Source: Mobula birostris
Taxonomy: Eukaryota
Direction: 5' to 3'
Assembly: GCF_030028105.1 (NCBI RefSeq)
Contig: NC_092376.1
Span: forward strand, 116,682,230-116,746,229
DNA: 64,000 bases
Shown: positions 1,500 through 55,418 of the stretch, piece after piece
Layout: the number at the start of each line of letters is the position of its first letter
Position numbering within the stretch: the first letter of the stretch is position 1
Program-made: the position numbers and the translations under genes
The notes under the pieces: model-generated
What the model saw: the letters and a program-made list of their open reading frames with translations, nothing else
Database searches by the model: none
Told to the model about the DNA's origin: nothing

Positions 1500-3303
1500 A
1501 AGGATTCACACAAACCTTGAAGAGCAAGAGGATAAGATATGAGAGAATAGGGCCAATCAAATGTGACAATGGAAAAGTGTATATGGAACCGGAGAAAATA
1601 GCAGAGGTATTTAATGAATACTTTGCTTCAGTATTCACTATGGAAAAGGATCTTGGTGATTGTAGGGATGACTTGCAGTGCACTGAAAAGCTTGAGAATG
1701 TAGATATTAGGAAAGAGGATATGCTGGAGCTTTTGGAAAGCATCAAGTTGGATAAGTCACTGGGACCGAACAAAACGTACCCCAGTCTACTGTGGGAAGC
1801 CAGGGAGGAGATTGCTGAGCCTCTGGCAATGATCTTTGCATCATCAACGAGGACGGAGGAGGTTCTGAAGGATTGGAGAGTTAGGATGTTGTTCCCTTAT
1901 TCAAGAAAGGGAGCAGAGATATCCCAAGAAATTATAGGCCAGTGAGTCTTACTTCAGTGGTTGGTAAGCTGATGGAGAAGATCCTGAGAGGCAGGATTTA
2001 TGAACATTTGGAGAGGCATAACATGATTAGGAGTAGTCAGTATTGCTTTGTCAAAGGCAGGTCGTGCCTTATAAGCCTGATTGAATTTTTTGAGGATGTG
2101 ACTAAGCACATTGATGAAGGTAAAGCTGTAGATGTAGTGTAGATGGATTTTAGCAAGGCATTTGATAAGGTACCCCATGCAAGGCTTATTGAGAAAGTAA
2201 GGAGGCATGGGATCCAAGGGGACATTGCTTTGTGGATCCAGAACTGGCTTGCCCACAGAAGGCATAGAGTGGTTGCAGATGGGTCATATTCTGCACGGAG
2301 TCCGGTGACCAGTGGTGTGCCTCAGGGATCTGTTCTGGGACCCCTACTCTTTGTGATTTTTATAAATGACCTAGACGAGGAAGTGGAGGGATGGTTAGTA
2401 AATTTGCTGATGACACAAGGGTTGGGTGTGTTGTAGATAATGTCATACAGGGCTGTTATACAGGATATTGATAGGATGCAAAACTGGGCTAATAAGTGGC
2501 AGTTGGAGATCAACCCAGATAAGTGTGAGGTGGTTCATTTTGGTAGGTCAAATATGATGGCAGAATATAGTATTAATGGTAAGACTCTTGGCAGTGTGGA
2601 GGATCAGAGGGATCTTGGGGTCCATAGAACACTCAAAGCTGCTATGCAGGTTGACTCTGTGGTTAAGAAGGCATATGGTGCATTGGCCTTCATCAATTGT
2701 GGGATTGAGTTTAAGAGCCGAGAGGTAATATTGCAGCTATATATGACCCTGGTCAGACCTCACTTGGAGTACTGTGCTCAGTTCTGGTCGCCTCACTATA
2801 GGAAGGACGTGGAAACCATAGAAAGGGTGCAGAGGAGATTTACAAGGATATTGCCTGGACTGGGGAGCATGCCTTATGAGAATAGGTTGAGTGAAATCGG
2901 CCTTTTCTCCTTGGAGTGATGGAGGATGAGTGGTGACTTGACAGAGGTGTACAAGATAATGAGAAGCATTGATCATGTGGATAGTCAGAGGCTTTTCCCC
3001 AGGGCTGAATTGGCTAGCACGAGACAGCATAGTTTTAAGGGGCTTGGAAATAGGTACAGAGGAAGTGTCAGGGGTAAGTTTTTTACGCAGAGAGTGGCGA
3101 GTGCATGGAATGGGTTGCCGGCCGCGGTGGTGGAGGCAGAAACGATAGGGTCTTTTAAGGGACTCTTGGATGGTTACATGGAGATTAATAGAGGGCTATA
3201 GGTAAAGCCTAGGTAGTTCTAAGGTAGGGACATGTTCAGCACAGCTTTGTGGGCGGAAGGGCCTGTATTGTTCTGTATGTTTTTTATGTTTCTATGTTTC
3301 TAA
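1500..3303 (+). mobile_element. CR1 LINE, 5'-truncated, degraded ORF2 (RT)
   Basis: ORF fragments [26 protein letters not shown] and VRPHLEYCAQFWSPH; (ATGTTTCT)n-type tail. Confidence 0.95.
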
Positions 3304-4559
3304 ACCGGGGTTTGGGTGGGTGAAACACCCCAACCTCAGGGATTTGGTGGGACCAAAGTCATATACACCCTAGACATACAAAGCCAGAGAAAGGTGGGTT
3401 TCTTGCTGTGGGATCCAGTGGCACATTAGTGAGGGGCTGATGAGCTACATTTCCATAGACACCCAGGAAAAAGGTTTCACATGCAAATATATATCGTTCT
3501 TTACCCAGACGTTGAGGAGAAGGCAGAACTTAGAAGAATGAGAGATGAGCTCATTGAAATGCATAAAATTCTGAGAGGGTGTGAAAGAGTAGGTGTCTGA
3601 GAAGCATTGCCTATCAAGAATAGAGATCATCATCTCAAAATAAGGGGTCATTATTCAGGATTGGGATGGAATGAAATTTATGAGGGAACAAAGGATATAT
3701 CTGGAGATTTACCAACAGTGTAAAACCAAGTGGGACTGGGAGCACAGAAGAGGATAGGAACAGGCAGACAAGCCCAGTGAGTGGACAAGAAAACCTGTCA
3801 CCTAAGAAAGGTTGCACTTGCCATAGGCAGAGTGCAAAGAAGATTCAGGGTTGGCAGGGTTTCTATATGAAGAGATATTGAGTAGACTTGAACTGTACTC
3901 TCTTCAACTTCAATAAAACATACTAAATCCTTCAAGGACTTGGCAGAACAAAATGCAAGGAAGGTGCTTTTCTAATTGAGGAACCTAGAACTTAAGGAAG
4001 GCCAGCCAGGACATACATGAGAAGATCTTTAATGTGGTGGTGAAGCTTTAGGCTGTAGATGCCTATTCTTTGTATTTGTTCAAAACACAGGTCGATAGAT
4101 ATCTGGACATGGAGTCAAGAGATACAGGACAGTGGTGGAAATGGCGCTGAGGTAGATGATCAACCACAATGATAATGAATGGTGGAACTGCCAGGAATGT
4201 CCAATGGACAACTCCTGCTTCTGTTTGTTATGGTCCTATGACAGCAGCATTAACACTGTTATTAACACCCAAAACCCATTGTTTTGTGTTGTATATCTGA
4301 TGCAACACACAAAACATTCCTCTCCACAGAATCTCAGACAATGCACTCTTTGTCTATATCACATTGTACTGTCCTGCCGTTTTCATCCCGCACATTATCC
4401 ATTCTACTGGATATACAACAGAGTAAACAATAAATCAGTATCGATTATGTTATTTCTTGTGCTGTCGGGGCAGAAGAGGGCCGTTCAGCCCATCGAGAAC
4501 ATATTATCTGCCCAAAATTCCCATCAGATACATCCCCCATATCTCACTGGAAACAGCTC

Positions 4560-4792
4560 CCCACAATTGTCCTGCCGTTAATTTACACTAGAGGCAGATT
4601 ACACTGACCGATTAACCTACCAAAGAATCATGTAATATTGAATTCTCTACCGTCCAAAACCCGGTCTCAGAGCACCGGAGAAAGCAAGGAAGGACATATG
4701 ATTTCCACACACTTAGCAGAGGAGCTCGGGATCGAACCAGAATCACAGGGGATGTGTGGAAAATACACTAGCATCTACACCGCTATGCCGCC
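4560..4792 (-). mobile_element. Degenerate tRNA-derived SINE (HE1-like) just downstream of IgV exon 1
   Basis: Minus strand starts GGCGGCATAGCGGTGTAG (A-box-like); B box GGTTCGATCCC at 4738-4728. Paralogous copy at about 22650-22903. Confidence 0.55.
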
Positions 4793-4830
4793 GTTTCTGA
4801 CACAGAATTATGTAACATTGAGCTGCTTAC

Positions 4831-5178
4831 CGCCCAAAACCCGGAGATTCAAATTCGTTTTCAGATCATTAAACGGTCCCGGAATCTGCACACGGCAGCA
4901 ATACCAGCCGCTATCTTCTCTCTGTAGATCATTTATAGTGGGCGACACATCTCCTGCCGCAATTCTACCACCAAGACTGTATCTCTGGGATGTTACAGAA
5001 GTTACTCTGTCTCCATTTGTTCCGAACAGTTCATCTCCCCAGTTCCTAACACCACACTGTCCCCGACCCCAGCACATCCCACTTTTGATATATTTTCGGA
5101 CAGAATAGCGGCACGGCAGTGTGATCGACTGTCCCGTGACTCCTCGCACGTTTGTCCCAGAGACGAAGGCGACTCGAC
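4831..5178 (-). CDS. TIM-family (HAVCR1/TIMD4-like) IgV exon, copy 1
   Basis: Acceptor ttcag|GT CGA and donor G|GTAAGC; 348 nt, phase 1-1. Translation has TLPCRYS...MCWGRGQC...TNG..V....RY.L.G.I..GDVS.TI..L..EDSGWYCCRVQIPGPFND, the TIM IgV signature. The exact orthologue cannot be assigned. Confidence 0.93.
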
Positions 5179-5660
5179 CTGAAGCAGTCCCGGAAAGAAA
5201 GTTACAGATGGCGCTGAATGGGATGATGAAAGAGGGTGTGTGCACAGTTTGAAAACCCGTCCCAGCATTGGGAAACTGATCCATTTTACCTGCTGCGAGG
5301 CATCGGGGGAATATTACGGAAAATCCCCAAATCGAAAGGACATCTCTGATCACAGATCCAGCCTCTCGTTCATTTTCCCACTCACATACCCACTGTGCTC
5401 CCAAACTAACCTTCACCGCAATAATCATGGATACACAAGGATCAGGTGTTCTACAGTCCATTCAGATCAGCACTGGTCAGTTCTCCAAGTTCACTCGCCC
5501 CGTCAGTTCACCCTTCAATCTTCAAACCCGGCAGACCCGGCACCACTCAGGGTCTAGGCTCCCTGACTCACACACCAGCTCCACCTCAATTACTGTATTC
5601 CAAGAAATTGTAACAACAAGATTGAGCAAGCTAATTCAATTCCTGCTTTCAGTAACGTAC

Positions 5661-5712
5661 CTAACAGAAGAAACATTATTGTCAAATGAGCCACAACGCC
5701 AGTAACAGCCAT
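5661..5712 (-). CDS. TIM-family gene copy 1, signal-peptide exon (MAVTGVVAHLTIMFLLL-G)
   Basis: Minus strand reads gacgcgATGG (good Kozak), then 17 hydrophobic codons plus 1 nt, then donor G|GTACGT. Phase 1 matches the IgV exon. Conserved in the paralog at 24021-24072. Confidence 0.85.
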
Positions 5713-7882
5713 CGCGTCGGACACTGTGGCGGCCGCTCTCCGTGTCGCTGCAGCAGATGCTGTGGCTGCGAGTTAAACTGTTGCTTTCGGCTTGTCGTGG
5801 ACAAGAGTTCCTTCCACACGGGAACACGGGTGTTGTTCACCGACACCCCCGAAAAATGAGCCAAATATTATCAAATACTCGGCCCCTCCCTGGCGTTACC
5901 ATCAAAGTCTAAATGCGTACGGATTTCCTTCAATTTCTTTCATTCCCGGCTTTTTGATAAGACAGTTCTGATCACAGATGTGACGCTACATCGTCAGAAA
6001 TTCGTGTCTGAAATGTCCATCAGTAACACGAGTGGGCAAGTGGGCAAGCGTCCTACTGGCTGTTTGAACTACTGTGTCGCTGGTCTGGTTGAGTCCTGTC
6101 ACTTTGTGTCACGTTTCAATGTTTTGTGCGTGAAGGGAACGGAGGGTGAAGGAGAGAGTGAGCGAAAGATCAAGAGACCCAAAAAGGGTGATTCCACTAT
6201 TTTCTGTTTTAACTCCAGCCTGGTCTGCACTGGCAGTCTAAATTTGGTCTGTCAACCTAGTTCAAGACTGGAGTCAAGGTCATTTGTTGGTGAGGAGTGA
6301 AGGGACTTTCAATCTCTGTCCAACTGTGAAGAGGCTTAATAGTGGCACAAGAGTCTCTGAACTGCAAATTGTAGCCGCAGTTTTACTTTATTCAATCATG
6401 TTGTAATAAGCATGGACACAGGGAGTGATACTGGTGCTGTGGTCAGACCTGGTACTAGGGATGACTACATCAGATGTCTAGTGCACTTCCCGGGCAGCTC
6501 ACAGGTAAAGGTGAGATGAAGATCAGACCCCAGTAATTGGGAGGTGACTGGCTGATTGATGTGAAGAAGAAATATCAAGGAGGTGGGGAGTCAGTGGGAG
6601 GTGGGGAAGTGATCGGAAGCATGGAGTGTGAGAAAGAGTGAGCAGGGAAAATGAACCATGATAATGGCCAGAAGGAGATGGACAGAAACAACAGAACAAG
6701 ACTGATTTCCCTAGCCAGGGTATTCAGTTATTTTTCATGCAGAACAACTGTAATTAAATGTAATGTAGGGCCTGATAATGATTTATATTGCATCATTAAA
6801 GCTAAAAAAAAATCAGGCAGACAGAATTGAACATAACACCAAAGAATGGAAGTATTAGGATGATGATTTACAGAGGGATAAAGATGCTCAGTGCCCCAGA
6901 TCCAGGCTGCAGATATATATTCATTCTGTCTCAGAATGCTGTGCCTCCAATTTATGAGGAGCGATGATAAGTGAGCAATTTGCAGACAAAGAGAGTGATT
7001 GTCTGAACACCTGGTGATGCAAAGAGCTGTTCAGATATATTCTGACCAAATGGACCACCGATGTGTTCAAACAATGACTTGATCTTGAACTCTCCAAATA
7101 TATTGAGAGTATACATTGAAGCGTGGGGGAAGGGTGGTGTGAATTGCTGTCTGTGACTCCAGTTATTCATTGTTCTCTCTCTGTGGCAGGTATGTCTCTT
7201 CATTGTTAAGAAACCAAAACTCTGCATGACCTGCCCAGTGCAGTCTTGCCAAGGCTCTGTACAACTACAGTACGACTCTGTTACTTCAATGTTCAAAGCT
7301 TCTAATAATAAATAGTGTAGCCCCCCTGGCCAGCCTCAGGGTCGCTTGGCTCGCTGTCGTCTAGGGAAACAGCCCTCAGCCCTGCCAAACTGGGTAACAG
7401 TTTGTGTGGATGCTGTGTGATGTACCCCACCCCGTCCAAATAACAGACAATACACCAGATATGATTAAGTGATTTACAGTTTATAGATATTACTGGAACT
7501 ATATAATTAATAGAGAATAAAATATAAAAGGAAAATCAAAGGCGCCACACTTATCAAAGTTCAATCTCTTTGTGCACAAACAGTTGGAGCTCAGGACCCT
7601 TCTTCTTCGCCCTGCGACCCCTCAGACCACCTCGCCTGGCCGCCTGGGACCAACAACGGTGGTCGACCAGATGCTCCACACGAGTCCGTCTCCGTCTCCT
7701 CTCCTCGCCAAACGTCCCGCTCGGGGTCCAACTCTGTTAGCGGATTCACAGCACCTGGTCCATCCTCTGTCCCTCTCTCCCGCCTTCTCCCCGAATATCT
7801 TACAGATACACCAAAAACATAACAACTACCGCAATTGGTTCATAACATCTTCTTATCAGTAACATGATTCAACCGACTGCTA

Positions 7883-10800
7883 ACATAGAACATAGAATAG
7901 TACAGCACAGTAGAGGCCCTTCAGCCCACAATGTTGTGCCGACCTTTAAACCCTGCCTCCCGTATAAGCCCCCACATTAAATTCCTCCATATACCTGTCT
8001 AGTAGTCTCTTAAACTTCACTAGTGTATCTGCCTCCATAAGTGACTCAGGCAGTGCATTCCACGCACCAACCACTCTCTGAGTAAAAAACCTTCCTCTAA
8101 TATCCCCCTTGAACTTCTCACCCCTTACCTTAAAGCCATGTCCTCTTGTATTGAGCAGTGGTGCCCTGGGGAAGAGGCACTGGCTATCCACTCTATCTAT
8201 TCCTCTTATTATCTTGTACACCTCTATCATGTCTCCTCTCATCCTCCTTCTCTCCAAAGAGTAAGCCCTAGCTCCCTTAATCTCTGATCATAATGCATAC
8301 TTTCTAAACCAGGCAGCATCCTGGTAAGTCTCCTCTGTACCCTTTCCAATGCTTTCACATCCTTCCTATAGTGAGGTGACCAGAACTGGACACATTACTC
8401 CAAGTGTGGCCTAACCAGAGTTTTATAGAGCTGCATCATTACATCGCGACTCTTAAACTCTATCCCTTGACTTATGAAAGCTAACACCCCATAAGCTTTC
8501 TTAACTACCCTATCCAACTGTGAGACAACTTTTAGGGATCTGTGGACATGTACTCCAAGATCCTTCTGTTCCTCCACACTACCAGGTATCCTGCCATTTA
8601 CTTTGTACTCTGCCTTGGAGTTTGTCCTTCCAAAGTGTACCGCCTCACACTTCTCCGGGTTGAACTCCATCTGCCACTTCTCAGACCACTCCTGCATCCT
8701 ATCAATGTCTCTCTGCAATCTTTGACAATCTCTACACTATCTACAACACCATCAACCTTTGTGTCGTCTGCAATCTTGCCAACCCACCCTTCTACCCCCA
8801 CATCCAGGTCATTAATAAAAATCAGGAAAAGTAGAGGTCCCAGAACAGATCCTTGTGGGACACCACTAGTCACAATCCTCCAGTCTGAATGTACTCCCTC
8901 CACCACCACCCTCTGCCTTCTGCAGGCAAGCCAATTCTGAATCCACCTGGCCAAACTTCCCTGGATCCCACGCCTTCTAACTTTCTGAATAAGCCTACCG
9001 TGTGGAACCTTGTCAAATGCCTTACGAAAATCCATATAGATCACATCCACTGCACTACCCTCATCTATATGCCTGGTCACCTCCTCAAAGAACTCTATCA
9101 GGCTTTTTAGACACGATCTGCCCTTCACAAAGCCACGCTGACTGTCCCTGATCAGACCATGATTCTCTAAATGCCTATAGATCCTATCTCTAAGAATCTT
9201 TTCCAACAGCTTTCCAACAAATGTAAGGCTCACTGGTCTATAATTACCCGGACTATTCCTACTACCTTTTTTGAACAAGGGGACAACATTCGCCTCCCTC
9301 CAATCCTCCGGTACCATTCTCGTGGACAACGAGGACATAAAGATCCTAGCCAGAGGCTCAGCAATCTCTTCCCTCGCCTCGTGGAGCAGCCTGGGGAATA
9401 TTCCGTCAGGCCTCGGGGACTTATCTGTCCTAATGTATTTTAACAACTCCAACACCTCCTCTCCATTAATATCAACATGCTCCAGAACATCAACCTCACT
9501 CATATTGTCCTCACCATCATCAAGTTCCCTCTCATTGGTGAATACCGAAGAAAAGTATTCATTGAGGACCTCGCTCACTTCCATAGCCTCCTGGTACATT
9601 TTCCCACCTTTATCTCTAATCGGTCCTACCTTCACTCCTGTCATCCTTTTTTTCTGCACATAATTGAAGAATGCCTTGGGGTTTTCCTTTACCCTATTCG
9701 CCAAGGCCTTCTCATGCCCCCTTCTTGCTCTTCTCAGCCCCTTCTTAAGCTCCTTTCTTGCTTCCCTATATTCTTCAATAGACCCATCTGATCCTTGCTT
9801 CCTAAACCTCATGTACGCTGCCTTCTTCCACCTGACTAGATTTTCCACCTCACTTGTCACCCATGGTTACTTCACCTTACCATTCTTTATCTTCCTCACC
9901 GGGACAAATTTATCCCTAACATCCCGCAGGAAGTCTCTAAACATCGACCACATGTCCATAGTACATTTCCCTGCAAAAACATCATCCCAATTCACACCCG
10001 CATGTTCTAGCCTTATAGCCTCATAATTTGCTCTTCGCTAATTAAAAATTTTCCTGTCATCTCTGATTCTATCCTTTTCCATGATAATGCTAAAGCCCAG
10101 GGAGCGGTAGTCACTGTTCCCCAGATGCTCACCCACTGAGAGATCTGTGACCTGACCCAGTTCATTACCTAGTACTAGATCTAGTATGGCATTCCTCCTG
10201 GTTGGCCTGTGCACATACTGTGACAGGAATCCATCCTGGACACACTTAAACCTTTGGAACTAATCAGGTGCTAATCAATATTAGGGAAGTTAAAGTCACC
10301 TATGATAACAACCCTGTTATTTTTGCACCTTTCCAAAATCTGCTTCCCAATCTGCTCCTCTGTATCTCTGCTGCTACCAGGGGGCCTATAGAATTCCCCT
10401 AGTAGAGTAACTGCTCCTTTCCTGTTCCTGACTTCCACCCATATTGACTCAAAAGAGGATATGGTGGGCAGGCTACATTACCCCACCTTTCTGTAGCTGT
10501 AATGGTATCCCTGACCAGTAATGTCACCCCTCCTCCACTTTTTCCACCCTCTCTATCCCTTTTAAAGCACTGAAATCCAGGAATATTGAGAATCCATTCC
10601 TGCCCTGGTGCCAGCCAAGTCTCTGTAATGGCCACTACATCATAATTCCATGTATTTATCCAAGCTCTCAGTTCATCACCTTTGTTTCTGATGTTTCTTG
10701 CATTGAGGTACACACATTTCAGCCCTTCTACCTTACTGTCTTTACACCATTTATTCTGCTTCTCTTTCCTCAAAGTCTCTCTGTAAGTTAGATCTGGCTT

Positions 10801-16488: not shown

Positions 16489-18510
16489 ATAACTGGAGCA
16501 AGGGGAAATATGAGGCTATCAGGCAGGATCCTGGAAGCATAAATTGAGAACAGATGTTCTCAGAGAAATGTAAGAAAAATGGGGCAAATGTTCAGGGGAT
16601 ATTTGTGTGGCTTTCAGCATAGGTACATTCCAGTGAGACAGGGAAAGGATGGTAGGGTACAGGAACCATGGTGTACAAAGGCTGTTGTAAATCTAGTCAA
16701 GAAGGAAAAAAAAACTTACGAAAGGTTCAACATGCTAGGTAATGATAGAGTCCAGAAGATTATAATGCTAGCAGGAGGGATAAGAAGTGAGAGAATAGGA
16801 CCAATCAAGTGTGACAGTGGAAAAGTTTGTATGGAACCAGGGGAGATAGCAGAGATACTTAATAAATACTTTGCTTCAGTATTCACTACGGAAAAGGATC
16901 TTGGCGATTGTAAGGATGACTTACAGCGGACTGAAAAGCTTGAGCATGTAGAAATTAAGGATGTGCGGGAGCTTTTGGAAAGCATCAAGTTGGATAAGTC
17001 ACCGGGATCAGATGAGATGTACCCCAGGCTACTGTGGGAGGTTGGGGAGGAGATCTTTGCATCATCAATGGGGACAGGAGAGGTTCTGGAGGATTGGAAG
17101 GTTGCGGATGTTGTTCCTTCATTCACGAAAGGGAGTAGAGATAGCCCAGGAAGTTATTGACCAGTGGTTGGTAAGTTGATGGAGAAGATCCTGAGAGACA
17201 GTATTTATGAACATTTGGAGAGGCATAATATGATTAGGAATAGTCAGTATGGCTTTGTCAAAGGGCAGGTCGTGCCTTACGAGCCTGATTGAATTTTTTT
17301 GAGGGTGTGACTAAACACATTGATGAAGGTAGAGCAGTAGATGATGTGTATATGGATTTCAGCAAGGCACTTGATAAGGTACCCCATGCAAGGCTTATTG
17401 AGAAAGTAAAGAGGCATGGGATCTAAGGGGACATTGCTTTGTGGATCCAAAACTGGCTTGCCCACAGAAGGCAAAGGGTGGTTGCAGACGGGTCTTATTC
17501 TGCATGGAGGTCAGTGACCAGTGGTGTACCTCAGGGGTCTGTTCTGGGACACCTACTCTTTGTGATTTTTATTATGACATGGATGAGGAAGTGGAGGGAT
17601 GGGTTAGTAAATTTGCTGATGACACAAAGGTCGGGGTGTGTTGTGGATAGTGTGGAGGGCTGTCAGAGTTTACAGCAAGATATCGATAGGATGTAAAACT
17701 GGGCTGAGAAGTGGCAAATGGAGTTCAACCCAGGTAAGTGTGAAGTGGTTCATTTTGGTAGGTCAAATATGATGGCGGAATATAGTATTAAGGGTAAGAC
17801 TGTTGGCAGTGTGGAGGATCAGCAGGATCTTGGGGTCCGAGTTCATAGGACACTCAAAGCTGCTGTGCAGGTTGACTCTGCGGTTAAGAAGGCATGCGGT
17901 GTATTGGCCTTCATCAATCGCGGGACTGAGTTTAGGAGCCGAGAGGTAATGTTGCACCTATATAGGAACCTGGTCAGACCCCACTTGGAGTACTGTGCTC
18001 AGTTCTGGTCGCCTCACTACAGGAAGGATGTAGAAAGCATAGAAAAGGTGCAGGGGAGATTTATAAGGATGTTGTCTGGATTGGGGAGCATGCCTTATGA
18101 GAATAGGTTGATTGAACTCGTCCTTTTCTCCTTGGAGCGATGAAGGATGAGAGGTGACCTGATAGAGGTATATAAGATGATGAGAGGCATTGATTGTGTG
18201 GATAGTCAGAGGCTTTCTCCCAGAGCTGAAATGGCTAGCATGAGATGGCACAGTTTTAGGTGCTTGGAAGTTGGCACAGAGGAGATGTCAGGGTTAAGTT
18301 TTTTATGCAGAGAATGGGCTGCCAGCGACAGTGGTGGAGGCAGATACGATAGGGTCTTTTAAGGGACTCCTGGATAGGTATATGGAACTTTGGAAAATAG
18401 AGGGCTATGGGTAACTCTCGGTAATATCTAAGGTAAGGACATGTTCAGCACAGTTTTGTGGGATAAAGGGCCTGTATTGTGCTGTAGGTTTTCTACGTTT
18501 CCATGTTCCG
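16489..18510 (+). mobile_element. CR1 LINE, 5'-truncated
   Basis: RT fragments; ACAAT on both sides (16484-16488 and 18511-18515); absent at the paralogous site ~28215. Confidence 0.93.
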
Positions 18511-19110: not shown

Positions 19111-22100
19111 CATACTATAAGACTATAAGACATAGGAGCAGAATGAGGCCATTCAGCCTATTGAGTCTGCTTCACCATTTTATCATGGCTGATCCTGGAT
19201 ATCGCTCAACCCCATACATCTGCCTGGATGCCATCTCCTTTAGTGCCCTGACCCATCTGGAAACAATCAATTTCCGCCTTAAATATACACACAGACTTGG
19301 CCTCCACTGCAGTCTGTGGCAGAGCATTCCACAGATTTACTGCTCTCTGGCTAAAAAAAAAGTCCTCTTTACCTCTGTTCTAAAGGATCACCCCTCAATC
19401 TTGAGGCCGTGGCTGTCATGGTCCAGTCTGTGAAGTCCGCATTCTGGTTCACAGTCTGGTCCATCATTCCTTATTCCAGGTTTTCCGGTTTTTCCTTGTT
19501 CTGTTGTGTGCTCTAATTGAGGCACATGATTCTCATTTTGGGCTAGCTACATAAATAGCTCCTTGATTCAGCTTCATTTGCTGGACTGTTCCCTTCCCTT
19601 CCCCTTCCTCCTGAGGCCTTGTCTGCAACCTCACCTGTATCACTGTCAATTTCTACTGCTGGAGCAAGACCTGAGCCTTGCTGTGTCTAGATAAGGAACT
19701 GTCTATTGTTGTTTGGAACTGTCCCTATGTCCACACCTTTGCTAGGTAGGTGCGGCCGTTTGCTGCTACCTTGTGTTGGGAACCATCTCTGTGTCCACAC
19801 CTTCGCTAGGTGGGTCCGGCCATTTGCTGCTACTTGTGTTGGGAACTGTCTGTGTCCACGCCTTCGCTAGGTAGGTCCAGTTGTTTGGCTCTACCTAGTG
19901 TTGGGAACCATCTTGTTGTGTTCAGCATTCTGTGTATGGGTCCTGGCCCTATGCCCTGTTCCCAAGGAGGGATCCTTGCTCTGTGTTCCATGTTCCTGTC
20001 TCTCCAGACCAAGGCTCTGTGTTTTGCATTCCTGTCTCCCAAGATTACCAAGGCTCCGTGTTCTGTGTTCCAGTTCTGCCAAGACCAAGTCCTTGTGTTC
20101 CAGTTCTCCCAAGACCAAGTCAAGGCTTTGTGCTCTCGCCCAGCCCAGGAGTACCTCATCCTGCTCAGGAAAGCCTTGAAGAATCCAAGCCTCATCCAGT
20201 CCTGTAGTCACGTCATGTCCTTGCCTAGTTCCGGGGTCCGAGCCTGAATCAAGACCCAGGTTCTGGGTCCTTGTCCAGTTTCTGGCTCAGCGTCCAAGCC
20301 CAGGCTCCTAGTTCCTAGTTCCTTGTCCTGGTCCCGCTTTCCTAGTCAAGTCCTAGCCCAGGCCCTGAATCCTTGTCTCGTCCAGGGCTTGTGTCATGTC
20401 CAGCATCCTTTCTTTCCCACTTCCCTTGCTTTCTTGACAAACCTAGTCCTGTTCCTTGTACCTCAGTGTCTGTGGCTTGCATTTGGGTCCACTCCCAGCG
20501 CCCCCTGTATGACAGAACACTCCAGCCAGACGAGGACCCAGCGACACAGAGACTGTCTTTCAACTCTCAATATCCTGGGTTCTCTCTTGTTGAATGCCCC
20601 CAACCCGCCCGTGTCGTCCATAGTTTGGGATTGCTTGTTTGGTCGCCAGGAGGCTCCCGTGGTGGTGGTGGGGAGTGGGTAGTACTGTCATGGTCCAGTC
20701 TGTGAAGTCCGCATTCCATTCACAGTCCGGTCCATCATTTCTTATTCCAGGTTTTCCGGTTTTCCCTTGTTCTGTTGGGTGCTCTAATTGAGGCACCTGA
20801 TTCTCATTTTGGGCTGGCTATATAAATAGCTCCTGGGTTCAGCTTCATTTGCTGGACTGTTCCCTTCCTCCTGATGCCTTGCCTGCATTCTCTGCCTGAT
20901 GCCTTGCCTGCAACATGCCTGTGTCCTCACCTGTATTACTGTCAAGTTCTACTGCCGGAGCAAGACCGGAGCCTTGCTGTGTCTAGATAAGGAACTGTCT
21001 ATCATTGTTTGGAACTGTCTCTGTGTCCACGCCTTCGCTAGGTAGGTCCGGCAGTTTGCCGCTACCTAGTGTTGGGAACCATCTCTATGCCCACACCTTC
21101 ACTAGGTAGGTCCAACCATTTGCCGTTACCTTGTGTTGGGAACCGTCTCCGTGTCCACGCCTTCGCTAGGTAGGTCCGGCCATTTGCTGCTACCTAGTGT
21201 TGGGAACCATCTCTGTGTTCTGCATTCCAGTCTCCCAAGATTACCGAGGCTCTGTGTTCTGTGTTACAGTTCTGCCAAGACCAAGACCCTGTGGTCCAGT
21301 TCTCCCAAGACCAAGTCAAGGCTTTGTGTTCTTGCCCAGCCCAAGATTACATCGTCCTGCCCAGGAAAGCCTCAAAGAATCCAAGCCTCGTCCAGTCCTT
21401 TAGCCAAGTCATGTCTTCGCCTAGTCCTGGAGTCCGAGCCCGAGTCAAGACCCAGATTCTGGGTCCTAGCCCAGTCTCTGGCTTGGCGCCCATACCCAAG
21501 CCTTGAAGAACCCAACCCATATCCAATCCTGTAGCCACGTCTTAAAGAAGCCAAGACATGTACAGTCCTGTAGCCACATCATAGCCTAGTTCCGGGGTCC
21601 AAGCCTGAGTCAAGACCCAGGTTCAGGGTCGTTGTCCAGTCTCTGGCCCGCTTTTCTTGTCCTGGTCCCTCTTTCCTAGTCAAGTTCTATCCCAGGCCCT
21701 GAATCCTTGTCTCGTCCAGGGACTGTGTCATGTCCGGCGTCCTTTCTTCCCCACTTCCCTTGCTTTCTCGACAAACCTAGTCCTGTTCCTTGTACTTCAG
21801 TGTCTATGTCTTGCATTAGGGTACGCTCACAGCGCCCCCTTGTATGATTGTGCCCTATAGTTCTGGATACTCCCACCATAGGAAACATTCGCTCTACATC
21901 CACCTTATCTAGTCCTTTAACATTCTGTAGGTTTCAATGATATCTTCCCACATTTTTCTAAATTCCAGTGAGTACAGGCCCAAAGCTGCCAAATGCTCCT
22001 CACATGTTAACTCCTTGAATCCTGAAATCATACCCGAGAACCTCCTCTGTAATCTCTCCAATGACAACACATCCTTTCTGAGCTAAGGGGCCCAAAGCTG

Positions 22101-22941: not shown

Positions 22942-23289
22942 CGTCCAAAACCCGGAGATTCAAATTCGTTATCAGATCATTAAACGGTCCCGGAATCCGC
23001 ACACGGCAGCAATACCAGCCGCTATCTTCTCTCTGTAGATCTTTTATAGTGAGCGACACATCTCCTGCCGCAATTCTACCACCAAGACTATATCTCTGGG
23101 ATGTTACAGAAGTTACTCTGTCTCCATTTGTTCCGATCAACACGTGTCCGCAGCCGCTTAAAGGGCACTGTCCCCGACCCCAGCACATCGCACTTTTGAC
23201 ATATTTTCGGACAGAATAGCAGCACGGCAGTGTGATCGACTCTCCCGTGACTCCTCGCACGTTTGTCCCAGAGACGAAGGCGACTCGAC
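22942..23289 (-). CDS. TIM-family IgV exon, copy 2
   Basis: Acceptor ttgcag|GT CGA and donor G|GTAAGC; 348 nt, open frame. Translation MCWGRGQCPLSGC...GWYCCRVRIPGPFND retains all six TIM cysteines plus one extra. Confidence 0.93.
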
Positions 23290-24020
23290 CTGCAATAATC
23301 CAGGGAAAGAAAGTTACAGATGGCGCTGAATGGGATGATCAGACGGGTGTGTCCACAGTTTAGAAACCTGCCCGAGCAACGGGAATGTGATCCATTTTAC
23401 CTGCCGGGCAGCATCTGAGGAATATTACGGAAAATTTCTACGTATTCAAAAGCATGTGGATATTATTAGGTATTTCCCACATCCTGAAACAGCCACCCCT
23501 CAGTTGACCCTTATTAGGATGTGGTGATCGACCAACATTTCTGTAGTTGTGACACAACCGATAGTCCAGCGGTAACATTTCAGAGAGCTGTTCAGTCACT
23601 GACACAGAAACATGCAGGGAAGGTACGAAGATCAGATTGTGATCTCGAGTATTGAAATCATTCTCCTCTCTTGCCATTTTGGATCTGTGATTCATTTTTC
23701 TACTCACATACACACTGTGCTCCCAAACCTTCACCGCAATGATCGGGGATATTCCGAGCTTTGGTCTTGTTTCTTAGTCCATTCAGATCAGCAATGATCA
23801 GTCCTCCAAGTTCACTCACCCCGTCAATTCACCATCAACACCCCCCCCCCCACATCCATTAATCTGCAAAAACCAGCAGCGCCGGGCATCACTCGGGGTG
23901 TCGGCTGTATCCCTCCCGGCTCTAACACTCACACACAGTCTCCATCTCAACTACTGCGTCCAAGAGGTTAAAACAACAAGATTGAACAAGCTAATTCAAT
24001 TCCTGCTTTCTGAAACGTAC

Positions 24021-24072
24021 CCAACAGAAGAAACATTATTGTCAAATGAGCCACAGCGCCAGTAACAGGCAT
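24021..24072 (-). CDS. TIM-family gene copy 2, signal-peptide exon (MPVTGAVAHLTIMFLLL-G)
   Basis: Paralog of 5661-5712; same 52-nt length and G|GTACGT donor. Confidence 0.85.
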
Positions 24073-25817
24073 CGCGCCGGGCACTGTGGCGGCCGCTCTC
24101 CGTGTCGCTGCAGTTGCTGCTGTGGCTGCGAGTTAAACTGTTGCTTCCGGCTTGAAGTGGACAAGATTTCCTTCCACAGGAACACAAGTGTATTTCACCG
24201 ACACCCCAGAGAAATGAGGCAAGTGTTATCAAACAGTCGTCTCCTCCCAGGCGTTACCATCAAATTCTAAACGTGCATGATTTTCCTTCACCGTTGCTTT
24301 CAGTTCCCAGTTTTGAGATAAAACAATTCTTCCGACTACAGATGTGACGCGACATCGACAGAAATTCATGTCTGAAATGTCCATCAGTAACACGAATGGG
24401 CAAATTGCCAAGTATCCAACTGGCTGTTCGAACTGCTGGGTCGCTGGTCCGGTTGAGTCCTGTCACTTTGCGTCACGTTTCAATGCTTCGTACGTGAACG
24501 GAACCGAGGGTGAAGTAGAGAGTGAGTGAGACCCAGATAAGGTGATTCCACTATTTTCTGTTTTAACTCCAGCCTTCTCTGCACTGGCAGTCTAAATTTG
24601 GTCTGTCAACGCAGTTCAAGACTGGAGTCAAGGTCATCTGTTGCTGAGGAGTGAAGGGACTTTCAATCTCTGTTCAACTGTGAAGAGGCTTAATGGTGGC
24701 ACAAGCGTCTCTGAACTGCAAATTGTAGCCGCAGTTTTACAATCATGTTGTAATAAGCATTGACACTGGGAGTGATACTGGTGCTGTGGTCAGACGTGGT
24801 ACTAGGGATGCCTACATCAGATGTCTGGCGCACTTCCCAGGCAGCTCACAGGTAAAGGTGAGATGAAGATCAGACCCCAGTAATTGGGAGGTGACTGGCT
24901 GATAGATGCGAAGAAGAAATATCAAGGAGGTGGGGAGTCAATGGGAGGTGGGGAAGTGATTGGAAGCATGGAGTGTGAGAAAGAGTGAGCAGGGAAAATG
25001 AACCATGATAATGGCCAGAAGGAGATGGAAAGAAACAACAGAAGACTGATTTGCCCAAGCCAGGGTATTCAGTTATTTTTCACGCAGAACAACTGTAATT
25101 AAATGCAATGCAGGGACTGATAATGATTTATATTGCATCATTAAAGCTAAAAAAAATCAGGCAGACAGAATTGAACATAACACCAAAGAATGGAAGTATT
25201 AGGATAATGATTTACAGTGTGATCAAATTGATTCCATGAAAAAGATCCAGGCTACAGATATATATTCATTCTGTCTCAGATTGCTGTGCCTCCAGTTTAT
25301 GAGAAACAATGGTAAGCAGGCAATTTCCAGATGAGAATAAATGTCTGTACACTGGCTGATGCAAAGGGCTGTTCAGTTATATTCTGACCAAATGGACGAC
25401 TAATGTGTTCAAACCATGACTTTATCGTGAACTCTCCAAATATATTCAGCACTCAGTACATAGAAGACTGGGGGAAGGGATCTGTGACTCCAGTTATTCA
25501 TTGCTCTCTCTTTGGCAAGTATGTCCTTTCATTGTTATGAAACCAGAACTCTCCACTACCTGCCCAGTGCAGTCTTGCCAAGACTCTATCCAACGACAGT
25601 ATGACTCTGTGACTCCTATGTTTAAAGCTTCTAATAATAAATGGTAACTTATTATTTGCACCTGGAGAGTCTCCTGAAGAGATGTGAGTATCATCACACC
25701 TTGTTTCTAATGTTCAGCACCATCCAATCACTTAGCATTTAAGTAAAATTATTTTTACATTATCAGCACTAAAATGGATGATCTCCCATATGTCTTCATT
25801 GTGCTCCATCTGTCAAG

Positions 25818-31247: not shown

Positions 31248-31674
31248 AAAACCATAGGACATAGGAGCAGAATGAGGCCTTTCAGCCCATTGACCCTGCT
31301 TCGCCATTCTATCATGGCTGATCAAGAATCCCACTTAACCTCATTCACTTGCCTTCTCGCCATATCCTGTGATGCCCTGACCAATCAAAAAGTGATCAAC
31401 TTCTGCCTTAAATATATGCACAGACTTGGCCTCTGCTGGAGTCTGTGGCAGAGCATTACACAGATCTTCTACTCTCTGGCTAAAAAAAATTCCTCCTTAC
31501 CTCTGTTGTAAAGAGTCACCCTGAATCTTGAGGCTGTGCTCCCATCGGAGGAGACATCCGCTCGACATCCACCCTATCTAGCCCTTTCAACATTCTGTAG
31601 CTTTCAATGATTTCTTCCCACATTTTTCCAAATTCCAGTGAGTACAGGCCCAAAGCTGCCAAACGCTCCTCACA

Positions 31675-31770
31675 TGTCCTTTTAGCGGCTGCGGACACGT
31701 GCTGATTAGAACAAATGGAGACAAAGTAACTTCTGTAACATCCCAGAGATATAAACTTCGTGGTAGAATT
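31675..31770 (+). pseudogene. Isolated 96-nt TIM IgV fragment (CC' loop to D strand)
   Basis: Translates CPFSGCGHVLIRTNGDKVTSVTSQRYKLRGRI, close to copy 2 (CPLSGCGHVLIGTNGDRVTSVTSQRYSLGGRI) but on the opposite strand. Flanked by a CR1 fragment and a Gypsy integrase fragment. Confidence 0.9.
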
Positions 31771-34700
31771 ACAAACACACCTTTTGTGTGACTTTGATCG
31801 GATTCTAATGTAAGAAAGTCCATGCAGACCAGCAGCAAGGGTCAAGTTCTCACAATATTCACTAATGGAGCAGCTCACTCAGATAGGGACTTTCTTCTTA
31901 TGCCTCAACTGCATGCTTCAATCTTGTATTCCACATCAGCAGCCATCTTGGGCAAATAGAATCGGTTTCTGACTAAATCTAGGATACGATCAATACCCAT
32001 GTGACCAAAGCCATTGTGAAGACTCAAATACACCAGATTGAAACTTTTCAGGTAAAAGAAGCTGGTATGTTGTTTAATCTCTAGTTAATCTCTTCCTGTA
32101 GAGAATCTGTCTTTTAGCTCTGGACAATCCCATTCTGAGAAGGTAGGGGAGTCTGGGAAATGCGTTTCTCACTGAAGGGGATGGCTTTTCACCAGTTTCC
32201 ATCTGCTTGATGACTTCTCCAATACAAGGATCTGCGAACTGGGAGTTTGTAATAGAGCATCAGAAAGATGAGAAATGACTGGTAATCCCCCACACTGATC
32301 TTCTGCCTAACTGTCAGGAATAGCACTTGAATGCATCGTTAAGCATTGAACATATGCAATGGCAACATCTGCGCCAGGTTCTGTCTGTTGGATAAGACCA
32401 CTCTCTCATGTAGCTTGCTCAACATCAGCGCTAACCTCAATCACATCACCTGAGTTCACTAGATGACTTTCAGTAAACTTCAAGATGCGTTCCACTCTTT
32501 CTGGCACTTTGTTTCACCGAGTGACATCTTGGAGCTTTTGGGACTTGCTTTGTCAACATCACTTTCCATCTGTCACCCAACAGGAACCGCTTCTAGTTTA
32601 AAATGAAGCTTGGGAGTACTATGACGAGACTCCCACTCACTCCATCTCTTTTCAAGATGTCTTCTCTTTTCCGCTACTAATGCCGGATTGGGTTCATAGC
32701 AGCAAGCGCTGTCTATGTGTCCATCTTCACCACATTTAAAACAGAACCAAGATTTCAGTTTGACACTTGGCTGTTTGTTAGTGTCTGTGGACTCTTGTTT
32801 ATCCATTGTGTCAGCCTTTTCTTTTGGTGGCGTATCACTTGCTGTCTTAGAGCTCACTTTTACCTTCTGCTATTTCTTAGCTTGTAGAATAGTTAGTTGA
32901 ATCTTAAGCCAAGTGATTTGTTTAGTCAGTTGAGAAGTAATTAAAATTAGCTGCACTACATCATCTTTACAGGCACCTGCGGTCTGAGACTGTATAACGG
33001 CACGTTGTGTGACTGCTCATACATGCTGCCTCATGTGTGCGGTTCTGGAAGCATGCTTGTCTTCCTCGGTACATAGAAATGTCAATAGTTCAGTAAATGA
33101 TGGCGTGTTTTGTTTTTTTTCCTGTTCCAGGTGCAGCTCTACCATTGGGGTGTTGTCCCAACATCCCCTACAAAATTGCTTTAAAAGATGCTTGTTAGTG
33201 CCAGTTTTGGCTACTCTACCTCGCTTTACAGTCAGTGGCAATGCTACCTATATGTTAAAGGACGATGCGGTGGTACGAACCCAAGTGATGAACACAGGCA
33301 CGGAGGCCGAGTCGGGAGGCGTTATGGTCGTAGCAAGCGTGGAATTGGTGTCCAGAGAGAGTCTTTAGCCGAAGTCTTGGTTTTAGTAGAAAATTCAATA
33401 ACGATGCTAGCCTTGGAACTGATAGTCCTAAGAAACATGGAACGAGGCTACTCTTACAAGAGTTGACCAACGAACTGGCAAGTCCTTGTTGTGGTCACAG
33501 GGTCTTTATCCTGTAGTTTCTGATGGGAAGCAGGTGTGTGTACTTAGTGGAACCTGGGAATGATTGGAATTTAAATGAGGTGATTGAGGCCCAATTCCTG
33601 AGGTAAATGGCATGGTGGGGGATTGCCAGGAGGGACCATGACACTATAGCCGCTGTAGGTAGACAGACAGTTTTTCACCTGTGTTCTGTATCGTGTTCAT
33701 GAACATGGTGAATCATTCATCTCCATCTTCCAGAGTGGCAAAAGCTGAATCTAGGAGTTGTACGTAAGTCGCGAGTGAAGCTCCAGGGCTTATTGACTTG
33801 ATGATGTCAGAAGCTGGTGGAAGAATACTTTCACATATTTTCCATGTTCTCTGAAGATCAGACACACTTGGGTCTTGCAAGAGCAGTTCAACACTAGTAC
33901 GCCAAGTCTCATAATCCGCCTCATTAGCTGGATGAGGGGTTCTACCAGAAAAAAAAAATCCAGAGCCTTACTGGTGGATTGCCATGAGCCATCAAGTCAT
34001 TACTATGCACAATGTGCTCCACTACGATTCTTTGAATATCTGGAGGGTTTAGATCATTGGAAGAGCGGGATGGGTTCACTGCAAATCCATTAGTTTGTAT
34101 TACAGGGATTGAGTTATTCTGCAAAGCAGTTAGAGCTGTTTCTGGCTGGTTAGCATCAGAGGAGTCAGTTCTGAATTGAAGATTTGTGGTCTTGTTATGT
34201 ACATCTTCAGCAATTTGAACAGTGACTATATCCCCACTATCGATAGTAAGGGTTTCACTAATCTGGGTTAACATTTCTCTCAAGATTTCATTATAATCTT
34301 CTCCCACTGTGCTTTGCTAAGGTTTTCAACTCACCAAGGTAAGCTTGAGTGGTGTCTTTTCCAAGTTTTTGGGCACTGCTTGCCAGTTGAGTGTACAGCA
34401 AGGGCTGGAGATCTTGCACGGCAGAATCAAAATCGTTCTCTACTATGAGGGTCTTAAGAAATTCTGCACCGGAGTCAGTTAGAGGAATAATTCTGGCAAC
34501 TGAGGCATATTCTTTTAGGAAGTCTACTATTTCTTCGTCTTTTTCTGTTCCTGTTATGCCACTGACTAAAGCAGCATTTGAGATTTTGATACCCTTTTCT
34601 CTATGACTTCCATTTATTTTCACTGCAGATCTTAATTGAATAAGTGAGTTTGAACAATAGATTATTTTAGTGCTTTGCATACTAATCAGTGAGTTATGGT

Positions 34701-55082: not shown

Positions 55083-55418
55083 GTCGAGTCACCCCTGGCA
55101 CTGGATCAGTAGTGCAAGGAGTTACGGAATAGTCGATCACACTACTGTGCCACTACTCTGTCAGCATCTAAATTAAAAGTGAAATGTGCTGGGGTCGGGG
55201 ACAATGTCCTGCTATGGGCTGTAGAGGTTAACTGGTTAGAACAAATGACGATACAGTAACTTCTGTAACATCCCAGAGATATCGTCTTGCTGGTAGAATT
55301 GTGTCGCTCACTATAAATCATCTACAAAGAGAATATAATGACTTGCATTGCTGTGGTGTGGAGATTCCTGGACTGCTTAATGATCTGAAAATGAACTTGA
55401 ACCTCCTGGTTTTGGACA
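55083..55418 (+). pseudogene. TIM IgV pseudogene exon
   Basis: Acceptor acag|GT CGA GTC; three in-frame stops (TAG, TAA, TAA); 12-nt deletion relative to the intact copies; donor changed to GCAAGC; ends HCCGVEIPGLLNDLKMNLNLLVLD. Upstream 54740-55082 resembles intron 1 of the intact copies; no leader exon seen. Confidence 0.92.

What the first reader, a model, noticed from the sequence alone, without database searches (positions are those of the whole stretch)
5024..5056. Hypervariable CC' patch inside otherwise near-identical IgV exons
By manual alignment, copies 1 and 2 differ at 15 of 33 nt in 5024-5056 versus 23135-23167 (CGVRNWGDELF vs CPLSGCGHVLI). They differ at only about 10 of the remaining ~315 exon nt, and 9 of those 10 are nonsynonymous. 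Flanking non-coding DNA is visibly more diverged than the conserved part of the exon. The CC' loop and FG loop together form the TIM ligand cleft (established). The pattern suggests gene conversion homogenising the scaffold while the ligand loop is swapped or positively selected, as in other diversifying immune receptors.
Basis: partly seen in the sequence, partly recalled or inferred. Interest (0 to 1): 0.7.

Follow-up and report, generated by a model that had tools for sequence, protein, structure and literature searches.

The report
Old loop types, homogenised TIM exons
Two neighbouring manta-ray TIM immune-receptor exons have been kept almost identical by gene conversion, except for a 29-base stretch encoding the ligand-pocket loop, where each keeps a loop version that stingrays also carry. 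This is a familiar kind of immune-gene evolution, seen here in an unstudied family.

Summary
The window is Mobula birostris. It holds two intact leader+IgV cassettes of the TIM (HAVCR/TIMD4) family on the minus strand: c1 at 4831-5178 and c2 at 22942-23289. They differ at 25 of 348 nt. Fifteen differences lie in 29 nt (5026-5054, the CC' loop and the start of strand C'). Of the other ten, nine are nonsynonymous.

The exon outside the patch is 3.1% diverged, against 13.1% for flanking non-coding DNA and 26% for the core of intron 1. Synonymous sites are homogenised too, so gene conversion of the scaffold is supported.

The patch is not a private hypervariable spot. c2 carries the canonical C-P-x-x-G-C loop. 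c1 carries a second type (C-G-V-x-N-C-GDELI) that also occurs in M. hypostoma and in two stingray species.

Scaffold trees group by lineage, not by loop type (AU p=0.0014). Synonymous sites in the patch are as diverged as nonsynonymous ones, so recent positive selection is not shown.

c1 also has private changes, including Cys46 to Trp, which removes a conserved TIM disulfide. Short-read contigs carry c1's exact patch at single-copy depth, and about three more copies of its loop type with the Cys intact. No c1 expression was seen.

The parts
4831..5178 (-). IgV exon of cassette c1 (348 nt, phase 1/1), TIM family. Loop type B, with Trp in place of the fourth conserved Cys. It is 100% identical to the IgV of the annotated M. 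birostris protein P0002.
5024..5056 (-). The patch in c1 (differences at 5026-5054), codons 41-51, peptide CGVRNWGDELF: CC' loop plus the start of strand C'. c1-private letters are at 5046 (R44), 5039 (W46) and 5026 (F51). 5023 (G52) matches the class A state.
5659..5712 (-). Leader exon of c1 (MAVTGVVAHLTIMFLLLG, followed by a GT donor). The 482-nt leader intron is 5177-5658.
   Evidence: The spliced joint 5176->5659 is seen in paralogue RNA contigs.
22942..23289 (-). IgV exon of cassette c2 (348 nt, phase 1/1). Loop type A2 with the six canonical Cys plus an extra Cys23. It matches no annotated protein found; the best is P0003 at 91.7%.
23135..23167 (-). The patch in c2, peptide CPLSGCGHVLI: the canonical TIM C-P-x-x-G-C loop.
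24019..24072 (-). Leader exon of c2 (MPVTGAVAHLTIMFLLLG, followed by a GT donor).
4700..5249 (.). Low-divergence (conversion) tract between the c1 and c2 units: 4.6% over 4700-5025 and 6.7% over 5055-5249. The 52%-diverged patch sits inside it as an island. Beyond it lie 26% (intron 1) and 14% (intron 2).
31642..31773 (+). Fragment c4: a roughly 100-nt piece of an IgV exon whose close homology starts at the 5' edge of the patch. Its loop is CPFSGCGHVLI, 3/29 nt from c2.
55085..55414 (+). Pseudogene IgV exon c3 (three stop codons, 12-nt deletion), loop CPAMGCRG*LV. It is about 20% from the c1/c2 scaffolds and 38-55% from them in the patch.

Best explanation
This is mosaic concerted evolution of a TIM IgV cassette family.

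The window (Mobula birostris) holds two intact leader+IgV cassettes 18 kb apart. Gene conversion between cassettes keeps the Ig framework nearly identical within a lineage. The tract here runs from about 4700 to 5249 and includes some intron on both sides. The roughly 29-nt segment encoding the CC' loop escapes homogenisation and stays as one of at least three old loop types:
- A1: P-S-R-G
- A2: P-[L/F]-S-G
- B: G-[V/A]-x-N

c2 carries type A2 and c1 carries type B.

The c1/c2 patch has three layers:
1. Codons 42-45 are the old A2-versus-B difference.
2. Codons 48-49 are His-Val, derived in Mobula class A cassettes. Class B, stingray class A and roughly pseudogene c3 keep the older Asp-Glu.
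3. c1 has private changes R44, W46 and F51.

W46 replaces the Cys equivalent to human TIM-1 C57. That removes the disulfide (C35-C46 here) that pins the CC' loop to the GFC sheet.

Shown: the mosaic itself, the cross-lineage loop types, the homogenised synonymous sites, and the reality of the sequence.

Inferred: the loop is kept distinct because overwriting it is selected against. An alternative for this step is that a 50%-mismatched segment resists heteroduplex repair. Also inferred: the loop types differ in ligand preference at the CC'/FG phosphatidylserine pocket, and c1 (perhaps c2 too) is now under relaxed constraint.
For: Window DNA:
- Scaffold 3.1%, non-coding 13.1% and intron 1 core 26.1% diverged. 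Scaffold dS is 0.013, and P(<=1 synonymous difference) = 2e-4 at the non-coding rate.
- The low-divergence tract extends into both introns, so coding constraint alone does not explain it.

Loop types across species:
- Type B occurs in c1/P0002 and P0016 domain 2 (M. birostris), P0004 (M. hypostoma), P0001 domain 1 (Hypanus sabinus), and P0006 and P0010 (Hemitrygon akajei).
- Types A1 and A2 are likewise shared by Mobula and Dasyatidae.
- On the 104 scaffold columns all nine Mobula domains form one clade (98/93*). Loop type B needs 6 changes on that tree.
- The AU test rejects monophyly of B (p=0.0014) and of A1 (p=0.015).
- P101 in the FG loop and R27 are specific to M. birostris and shared by cassettes of different loop types.

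The loop type is resident at this locus:
- P0004, the M. hypostoma type B protein, has a leader identical to c1's (18/18) and the same mucin start.
- Organism B DNA laid on c1's flanks at about 2% divergence shows the type B patch with Cys.

Age and reality of the patch:
- Patch pS is 0.64 and pN 0.40.
- c1's patch is present in read-derived contigs at single-copy depth. About three more type B copies differ only at 5023, 5026, 5039 and 5046.

Structure:
- The best PDB matches are TIM-1/TIM-4 (1e-28; TM 0.88, rmsd 1.3 A to 2or8).
- The disulfide map and the cleft come from PMC9611583.
Against: - Cross-species evidence is at protein level only and rests on automatic gene models. DNA of the other loci could not be fetched, so conversion tracts were not mapped across paralogues and no site-model dN/dS was run.
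- Monophyly of type A2 is not rejected (p=0.087).
- Loop groups were defined from the sequences before the test but after I had looked at them.
- The patch at 52% still exceeds the most diverged intron stretch at 26% (p=0.003). Age alone may therefore not explain it, and some past acceleration is likely.
- c1's lineage carries more private amino-acid changes than about 1% neutral divergence predicts. These could be selection or imports from cassettes I could not see.
- Whether selection or a mechanical barrier protects the loop was not tested.
Confidence: 0.7

Rival explanations
1. Recent paste-in. The whole c1 exon was first converted to a c2-like sequence. A short micro-conversion from another type B cassette (P0016 domain 2-like) then wrote the loop back in.
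For: Donors of the right type exist in the same genome: about three copies differing from c1's patch at 4 of 33 nt, plus P0016 domain 2. The patch edges are sharp.
Against: The likely M. hypostoma orthologue (P0004: identical leader, same mucin start) already has the type B loop, so the loop type predates the M. birostris-specific scaffold changes (R27, P101). c1's patch is 12% from the other type B copies, about as far as unconverted flanks, which does not look like a fresh copy.
Confidence: 0.13
2. Point-mutation hypervariability. After the c1/c2 duplication, strong diversifying selection on the ligand loop fixed 15 substitutions in 29 nt in situ.
For: The CC' tip is the most variable part of the domain among ray cassettes. 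The patch is 2-3 times more diverged than the scaffold even against pseudogene c3. The patch exceeds the intron 1 rate (p=0.003).
Against: Both loop versions are shared with other genera and another family, so they were not made after a recent duplication. Synonymous positions in the patch are as diverged as nonsynonymous ones.
Confidence: 0.07
3. Convergence. The G-V-x-N loop arose independently in eagle rays and in stingrays on locally duplicated genes, with no conversion needed.
For: Only four to five residues define the type. Pristis has an intermediate-looking T-V-M-G.
Against: Three different loop types would each have to recur. G-V-M-N-C is identical in H. sabinus and M. birostris. The window DNA independently shows homogenised synonymous sites.
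Confidence: 0.05
4. Assembly artefact or collapsed paralogues created a chimeric exon.
For: The family has about 4-10 near-identical exons per genome. Exon depth is 50-140x against about 14x for unique flanks.
Against: A contig of about 13.5x depth carries all four c1-private patch letters together. The annotated protein P0002 matches the exon 100%. The exon is in frame with intact splice sites.
Confidence: 0.02

Closest known systems
Mammalian TIM-1/TIM-4 IgV domains (PDB 2or8, 3bi9/3bib, 5dzo)
   Same: V-set fold with the TIM cysteine pattern. The CC' loop is pinned next to the FG loop to form the metal-dependent phosphatidylserine pocket, and the N-D of the FG motif is conserved. The c2 loop (QCPLSGC) is close to human TIM-4 (QCPYSGC). 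Sources: sequence E=1e-28, model TM 0.88, cleft and disulfides from PMC9611583.
   Different: The FG tip is P-F-N-D in most M. birostris cassettes instead of W-F-N-D. c1 lacks the Cys equivalent to human C57. c2 has an extra Cys23. The cassettes sit in an array with no mucin, TM or tail exons in the window.
CD300A/CD300C paired receptors in primates (PMC12447643)
   Same: IgV receptors of phospholipids whose extracellular exon shows concerted evolution. Paralogues within a lineage are more alike than orthologues between lineages, which the authors attribute to gene conversion.
   Different: There the conversion is read as preserving the same ligand site on receptors with opposite signalling tails. 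Here the ligand loop is the part that escapes conversion, and it exists in several old types.
Mosaic concerted evolution with retained binding-site variants in MHC, KIR, Siglec and similar immune gene families (general knowledge, not tested here)
   Same: Frameworks are homogenised by conversion while short binding-site segments persist as old lineages.
   Different: Here the variants are paralogous cassettes rather than alleles, as far as the data show. The family is TIM in cartilaginous fish, for which I found no published description.

Membership tests
TIM (HAVCR1/HAVCR2/TIMD4) receptor family | N-terminal V-set Ig domain most similar to TIM IgV domains | tested here: met
   Pfam V-set E=3e-16 for c1 and 2e-18 for c2. 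The top 15 PDB sequence hits are all TIM-1/2/3/4, best 2or8 at 1e-28. The top 19 Foldseek hits are all TIM, with TM 0.88.
TIM (HAVCR1/HAVCR2/TIMD4) receptor family | Six conserved cysteines forming three disulfides (human TIM-1 C36-C105, C46-C57, C52-C104) | tested here: inconclusive
   c2 has all six plus an extra Cys23. c1 has five: the C57 equivalent is Trp46 (TGG; other type B copies have TGT). So the feature is met for the cassette family and for c2, and not met for c1 itself.
TIM (HAVCR1/HAVCR2/TIMD4) receptor family | FG-loop metal-ion-dependent ligand-binding motif W-F-N-D | tested here: inconclusive
   c1 and c2 have P-F-N-D. F, N and D are kept and W is replaced. Stingray relatives have W-F-N-D, and M. 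hypostoma has L-F-N-D or L-Y-N-D. Binding was not assayed.
TIM (HAVCR1/HAVCR2/TIMD4) receptor family | Mucin stalk, transmembrane helix and cytoplasmic tail downstream of the IgV | tested here: not met
   tblastn of six full-length ray TIM proteins finds only leader and IgV exons in the window. The annotated P0002 continues into a Ser/Thr/Pro-rich stretch encoded outside the window and ends in a repeat-derived tail without a TM. The M. hypostoma orthologue P0004 has stalk, TM and tail.
Concerted evolution by gene conversion | Paralogues within a lineage are more alike than orthologues between lineages, and synonymous and adjacent intron sites are homogenised too | tested here: met
   Mobula clade 98/93* on scaffold columns. 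The AU test rejects grouping by loop type (B p=0.0014, A1 p=0.015). Scaffold dS is 0.013 against 13-26% non-coding divergence, and the tract runs into both introns.
Positively selected hypervariable site | dN significantly above dS at the sites in question | tested here: not met
   Patch pN 0.40 against pS 0.64. Scaffold dN/dS is about 3 with p=0.46. Codon site models across paralogues could not be run because no DNA of the other loci was available.

The most novel reading that the evidence does not exclude
Ray TIM loci may be built as arrays of alternative leader+IgV cassettes, each carrying one of three old CC' loop types. These would be spliced singly or in tandem onto shared mucin/TM/tail exons, giving a small germline repertoire of ligand pockets on one signalling stalk. 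That would resemble variable-first-exon clusters. Conversion would maintain the framework and selection the loop types.

Hints:
- Two intact cassettes lie 18 kb apart with no stalk exons between them.
- Gene models for 242-407 aa proteins span 26-92 kb.
- Two-IgV models join an A and a B cassette in both M. birostris (P0016) and H. sabinus (P0001).
- Loop types and the two tail types occur in all combinations.
Probability: 0.2. Interest if true: 0.7.

Novelty: new member of a known kind. Interest (0 to 1): 0.45.

Why it matters
TIM receptors sense phosphatidylserine on dying cells, and enveloped viruses exploit them. The pocket between the CC' and FG loops decides what they bind.

This locus suggests that rays keep several versions of that pocket loop across two families while conversion renews the rest of the domain. 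If so, the loop versions probably differ in function, and they offer natural variants for testing what the CC' loop contributes to ligand choice.

The locus also gives a clean worked example, with both boundaries visible in one window, of conversion tracts stopping at a binding-site segment. The evolutionary process itself is well known from other immune gene families.

Tried and rejected
- **Donor in the window:** c1's 30-nt patch has no other match at up to 3 mismatches.
- **Simple mechanisms:** I checked by eye whether c1's patch is an inversion or a frameshifted version of c2's. It is neither. At zero offset 14 of 29 bases match, so the two are homologous but deeply diverged.
- **DNA of paralogues and orthologues:** The look-up of encoding contigs returned gene spans but no DNA for P0002, P0003, P0004 and P0016 because the files are too large. 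GENECONV/RDP and codeml were therefore not run.
- **Expression of c1:** the two RNA-like contigs laid on the exon are spliced leader-IgV-mucin transcripts of a class A paralogue (28 mismatches, P0005-like), not c1. No RNA run was listed as holding c1-specific words, but only 8 words were sampled. This is not evidence of silence.
- **My first guess for a leader:** the in-frame stretch just upstream of the exon is intron. The real leaders are at 5659-5712 and 24019-24072.
- **tRNA-like sequence:** ARAGORN finds no tRNA in the stretch just 3' of the exon.
- **Literature:** no paper on TIM genes of cartilaginous fish was found.
- **Not used:** no complex prediction was run, because the report claims no protein-protein binding.

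Full report
**What is there.** c1 is 4831-5178 and c2 is 22942-23289. Each is 348 nt with an AG acceptor, a GTAAG donor and phase 1 at both ends. The exons align without gaps and differ at 25 positions. Fifteen lie within 5026-5054 and ten elsewhere, and nine of those ten are nonsynonymous. The peptides are CGVRNWGDELF (c1) and CPLSGCGHVLI (c2). In 200,000 random placements of 25 differences, none gave 15 in 29 nt; the largest was 11.

**Identity.** Both translations hit Pfam V-set. Their best solved relatives are mouse TIM-1 (2or8, 1e-28), then TIM-4, TIM-3 and TIM-2. An AlphaFold model of c1 (pLDDT 83) superposes on 2or8 with TM 0.88 and rmsd 1.3 A, and the top 19 structural hits are all TIM domains.

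The exon is 100% identical to the IgV of an annotated Mobula birostris protein (P0002), so the window is giant manta ray. Real leader exons lie at 5659-5712 and 24019-24072, each with an ATG and a GT donor. The same leader-IgV splice is seen in RNA contigs of a paralogue. No mucin, TM or tail exon of six ray TIM proteins is found in the window. This agrees with an earlier scan note (s1-145536). Other notes place further TIM exons before the window's start.

**Where the patch sits.** PMC9611583 gives human TIM-1 disulfides C36-C105, C46-C57 and C52-C104. The last two fix the CC' loop (positions 50-59) beside the FG loop, forming the phosphatidylserine pocket. By the alignment, the patch is human residues 52-62.

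**Conversion of the scaffold.** An alignment of 3.3 kb of the two units gives these divergences:

| Region | Divergence |
|---|---|
| All non-coding | 13.1% |
| Core of intron 1 (5250-5599) | 26.1% |
| Intron 2 (4020-4699) | 13.8% |
| 4700-5025 | 4.6% |
| 5055-5249 | 6.7% |
| Exon outside the patch | 3.1% (Fisher p=6e-9 against non-coding) |

Scaffold dS is 0.013 (1 change in 78 synonymous sites). The chance of so few at the non-coding rate is 2e-4. The low tract also runs into both introns. Scaffold dN/dS is about 3 but not significant (p=0.46).

**What the patch is.** Two protein searches returned 16 IgV domains from four myliobatiform species, plus skates, a sawfish and sharks. The four residues between the third and fourth Cys fall into three types:

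| Type | Motif | Found in |
|---|---|---|
| A1 | P-S-R-G | P0005, P0007, P0016 domain 1, P0009, P0011, P0012 |
| A2 | P-[L/F]-S-G or S-L-S-G | c2, c4, P0003, P0008, P0001 domain 2 |
| B | G-[V/A]-x-N or D-V-M-N, followed by C-GDELI | c1, P0016 domain 2, P0004, P0001 domain 1, P0006, P0010 |

Each type occurs both in Mobula (Myliobatidae) and in Dasyatidae. Sharks, skates and mammals have class A-like C-P/S/T-x-x-x-C loops. So c2's loop is the canonical form, and c1's belongs to a second type shared across two ray families.

On the 104 scaffold columns, all nine Mobula domains form one clade (98/93*) whatever their loop type. Type B needs six changes on that tree. The AU test rejects monophyly of B (p=0.0014) and of A1 (p=0.015); A2 is not rejected (p=0.087). 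Residues such as P101 (the W position of the W-F-N-D motif) and R27 are specific to M. birostris yet shared by cassettes of different loop types. This is the signature of concerted evolution of the framework around loop segments that persist.

**The patch is composite.** It has three layers:
- **Codons 42-45** carry the A2-versus-B difference.
- **Codons 48-49** are H-V in all Mobula class A cassettes. They are D-E in class B and in stingray class A, and G-stop (from a Glu-like codon) in pseudogene c3. H-V is therefore derived on the Mobula class A side.
- **Four positions separate c1 from the other type B copies of the same genome**: 5046 (M44R), 5039 (C46W, TGT to TGG), 5026 (I51F) and 5023 (R52G, which is the class A state).

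Within the patch, pS is 0.64 and pN 0.40, so nothing points to recent dN > dS.

Even so, the patch at 52% exceeds the most diverged intron stretch (p=0.003). It is also 38-55% diverged against pseudogene c3, whose scaffold is about 20% away. Across ray cassettes the CC' tip is the most variable part of the domain (1.61 bits against 0.22), followed by BC-loop position 30 and FG-loop position 101. The loop has therefore evolved fast over the long term, which fits past diversification.

**Reads.** Contigs of DNA run X1 (organism A) carry c1's exact patch at about 13.5x, the depth of unique flanks. Three other contigs (45x together) carry the type B patch with Met44, Cys46, Ile51 and Arg52.

Organism B lies on c1's flanks at about 2% divergence and shows only the Cys form. 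At 4888, 5089 and 5098 it also matches the M. hypostoma protein P0004. P0004 shares c1's leader 18/18 and its mucin start. The locus was therefore probably already type B before the two Mobula species split. That favours "resident loop, flanks converted" over "loop pasted in".

**State of c1 and c2.** Both are open, with intact splice sites. c1 has lost the Cys that pairs with C35. The equivalent human variant C57S was among those that lowered TIM-1-mediated entry of pseudotyped virus. c2 has an extra Cys23 and replaces the nearly invariant K106.

P0002 ends in a repeat-derived tail without a TM. c2 matches no annotated protein found. No RNA run was listed as holding c1-specific words, though only 8 words were sampled. 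I read this as likely relaxed constraint on both cassettes, but a new function is not excluded.

**Limits.** Cross-species evidence is at protein level and comes from automatic gene models. The DNA of other cassettes could not be fetched. X1 may be the individual that was assembled. Whether selection or a mechanical barrier protects the loop is inference.

**Comparison and novelty.** The process matches gene conversion of IgV exons in other immune receptor families, for example CD300A/CD300C in primates (PMC12447643). The twist here is that the ligand loop is the part spared from conversion. I found no paper on TIM genes of cartilaginous fish. I file this as a new member of a known kind. The more novel reading, an array of alternative IgV cassettes with three old pocket types on shared stalks, is not excluded, and cDNA would test it.

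Noticed in passing
window 6200-6849 versus about 24560-25200: A second low-divergence tract (26/639 = 4.1%) lies 0.5-1.1 kb upstream of the two leader exons. It sits between stretches at 12-26% divergence. It may be a further conversion tract or a conserved promoter region.
   Followed up: partly
window 31642-31773 (+): A roughly 100-nt IgV fragment (c4) shows close homology to c2 (3/29 in the patch, about 90% after it) that begins at the 5' edge of the patch. Upstream it is barely recognisable. The same edge may be a recurrent conversion or breakpoint boundary.
   Followed up: partly
window 55085-55414 (+): A third IgV exon is a pseudogene: three in-frame stops, a 12-nt deletion and a fourth loop version (P-A-M-G). 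It lies on the opposite strand.
   Followed up: partly
window 4875-4877 (c1) and 22986-22988 (c2), codon 101: The FG-loop tip is Pro (P-F-N-D) in five M. birostris cassettes of all loop types. It is Leu in M. hypostoma and Trp or Leu in stingrays. This species-specific change at the Trp position of the TIM W-F-N-D phosphatidylserine-binding motif appears to have spread between cassettes.
   Followed up: partly
window 19413-21847 (hit at 19921-20058, minus strand): A tandem-repeat-rich stretch downstream of c2 translates to something like the odd LELRNLGALG-type C-terminus of the annotated protein P0002 (47% over 53 aa). That tail is probably a gene-model read-through of repeat DNA.
   Followed up: no
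window 1518-3298, 7882-9776, 16770-18507, 40652-42557: A roughly 1.8-kb element is present four times at 70-86% identity, in both orientations. It is probably a dispersed repeat. Its nature was not examined.
   Followed up: no
window 5250-5599 versus 23360-23960: The leader-IgV intron is the most diverged part of the two units (26%). c2 also has about 210 nt more than c1 here, between 5324/23435 and 5369/23691. This stretch may show the true age of the A/B cassette split.
   Followed up: partly
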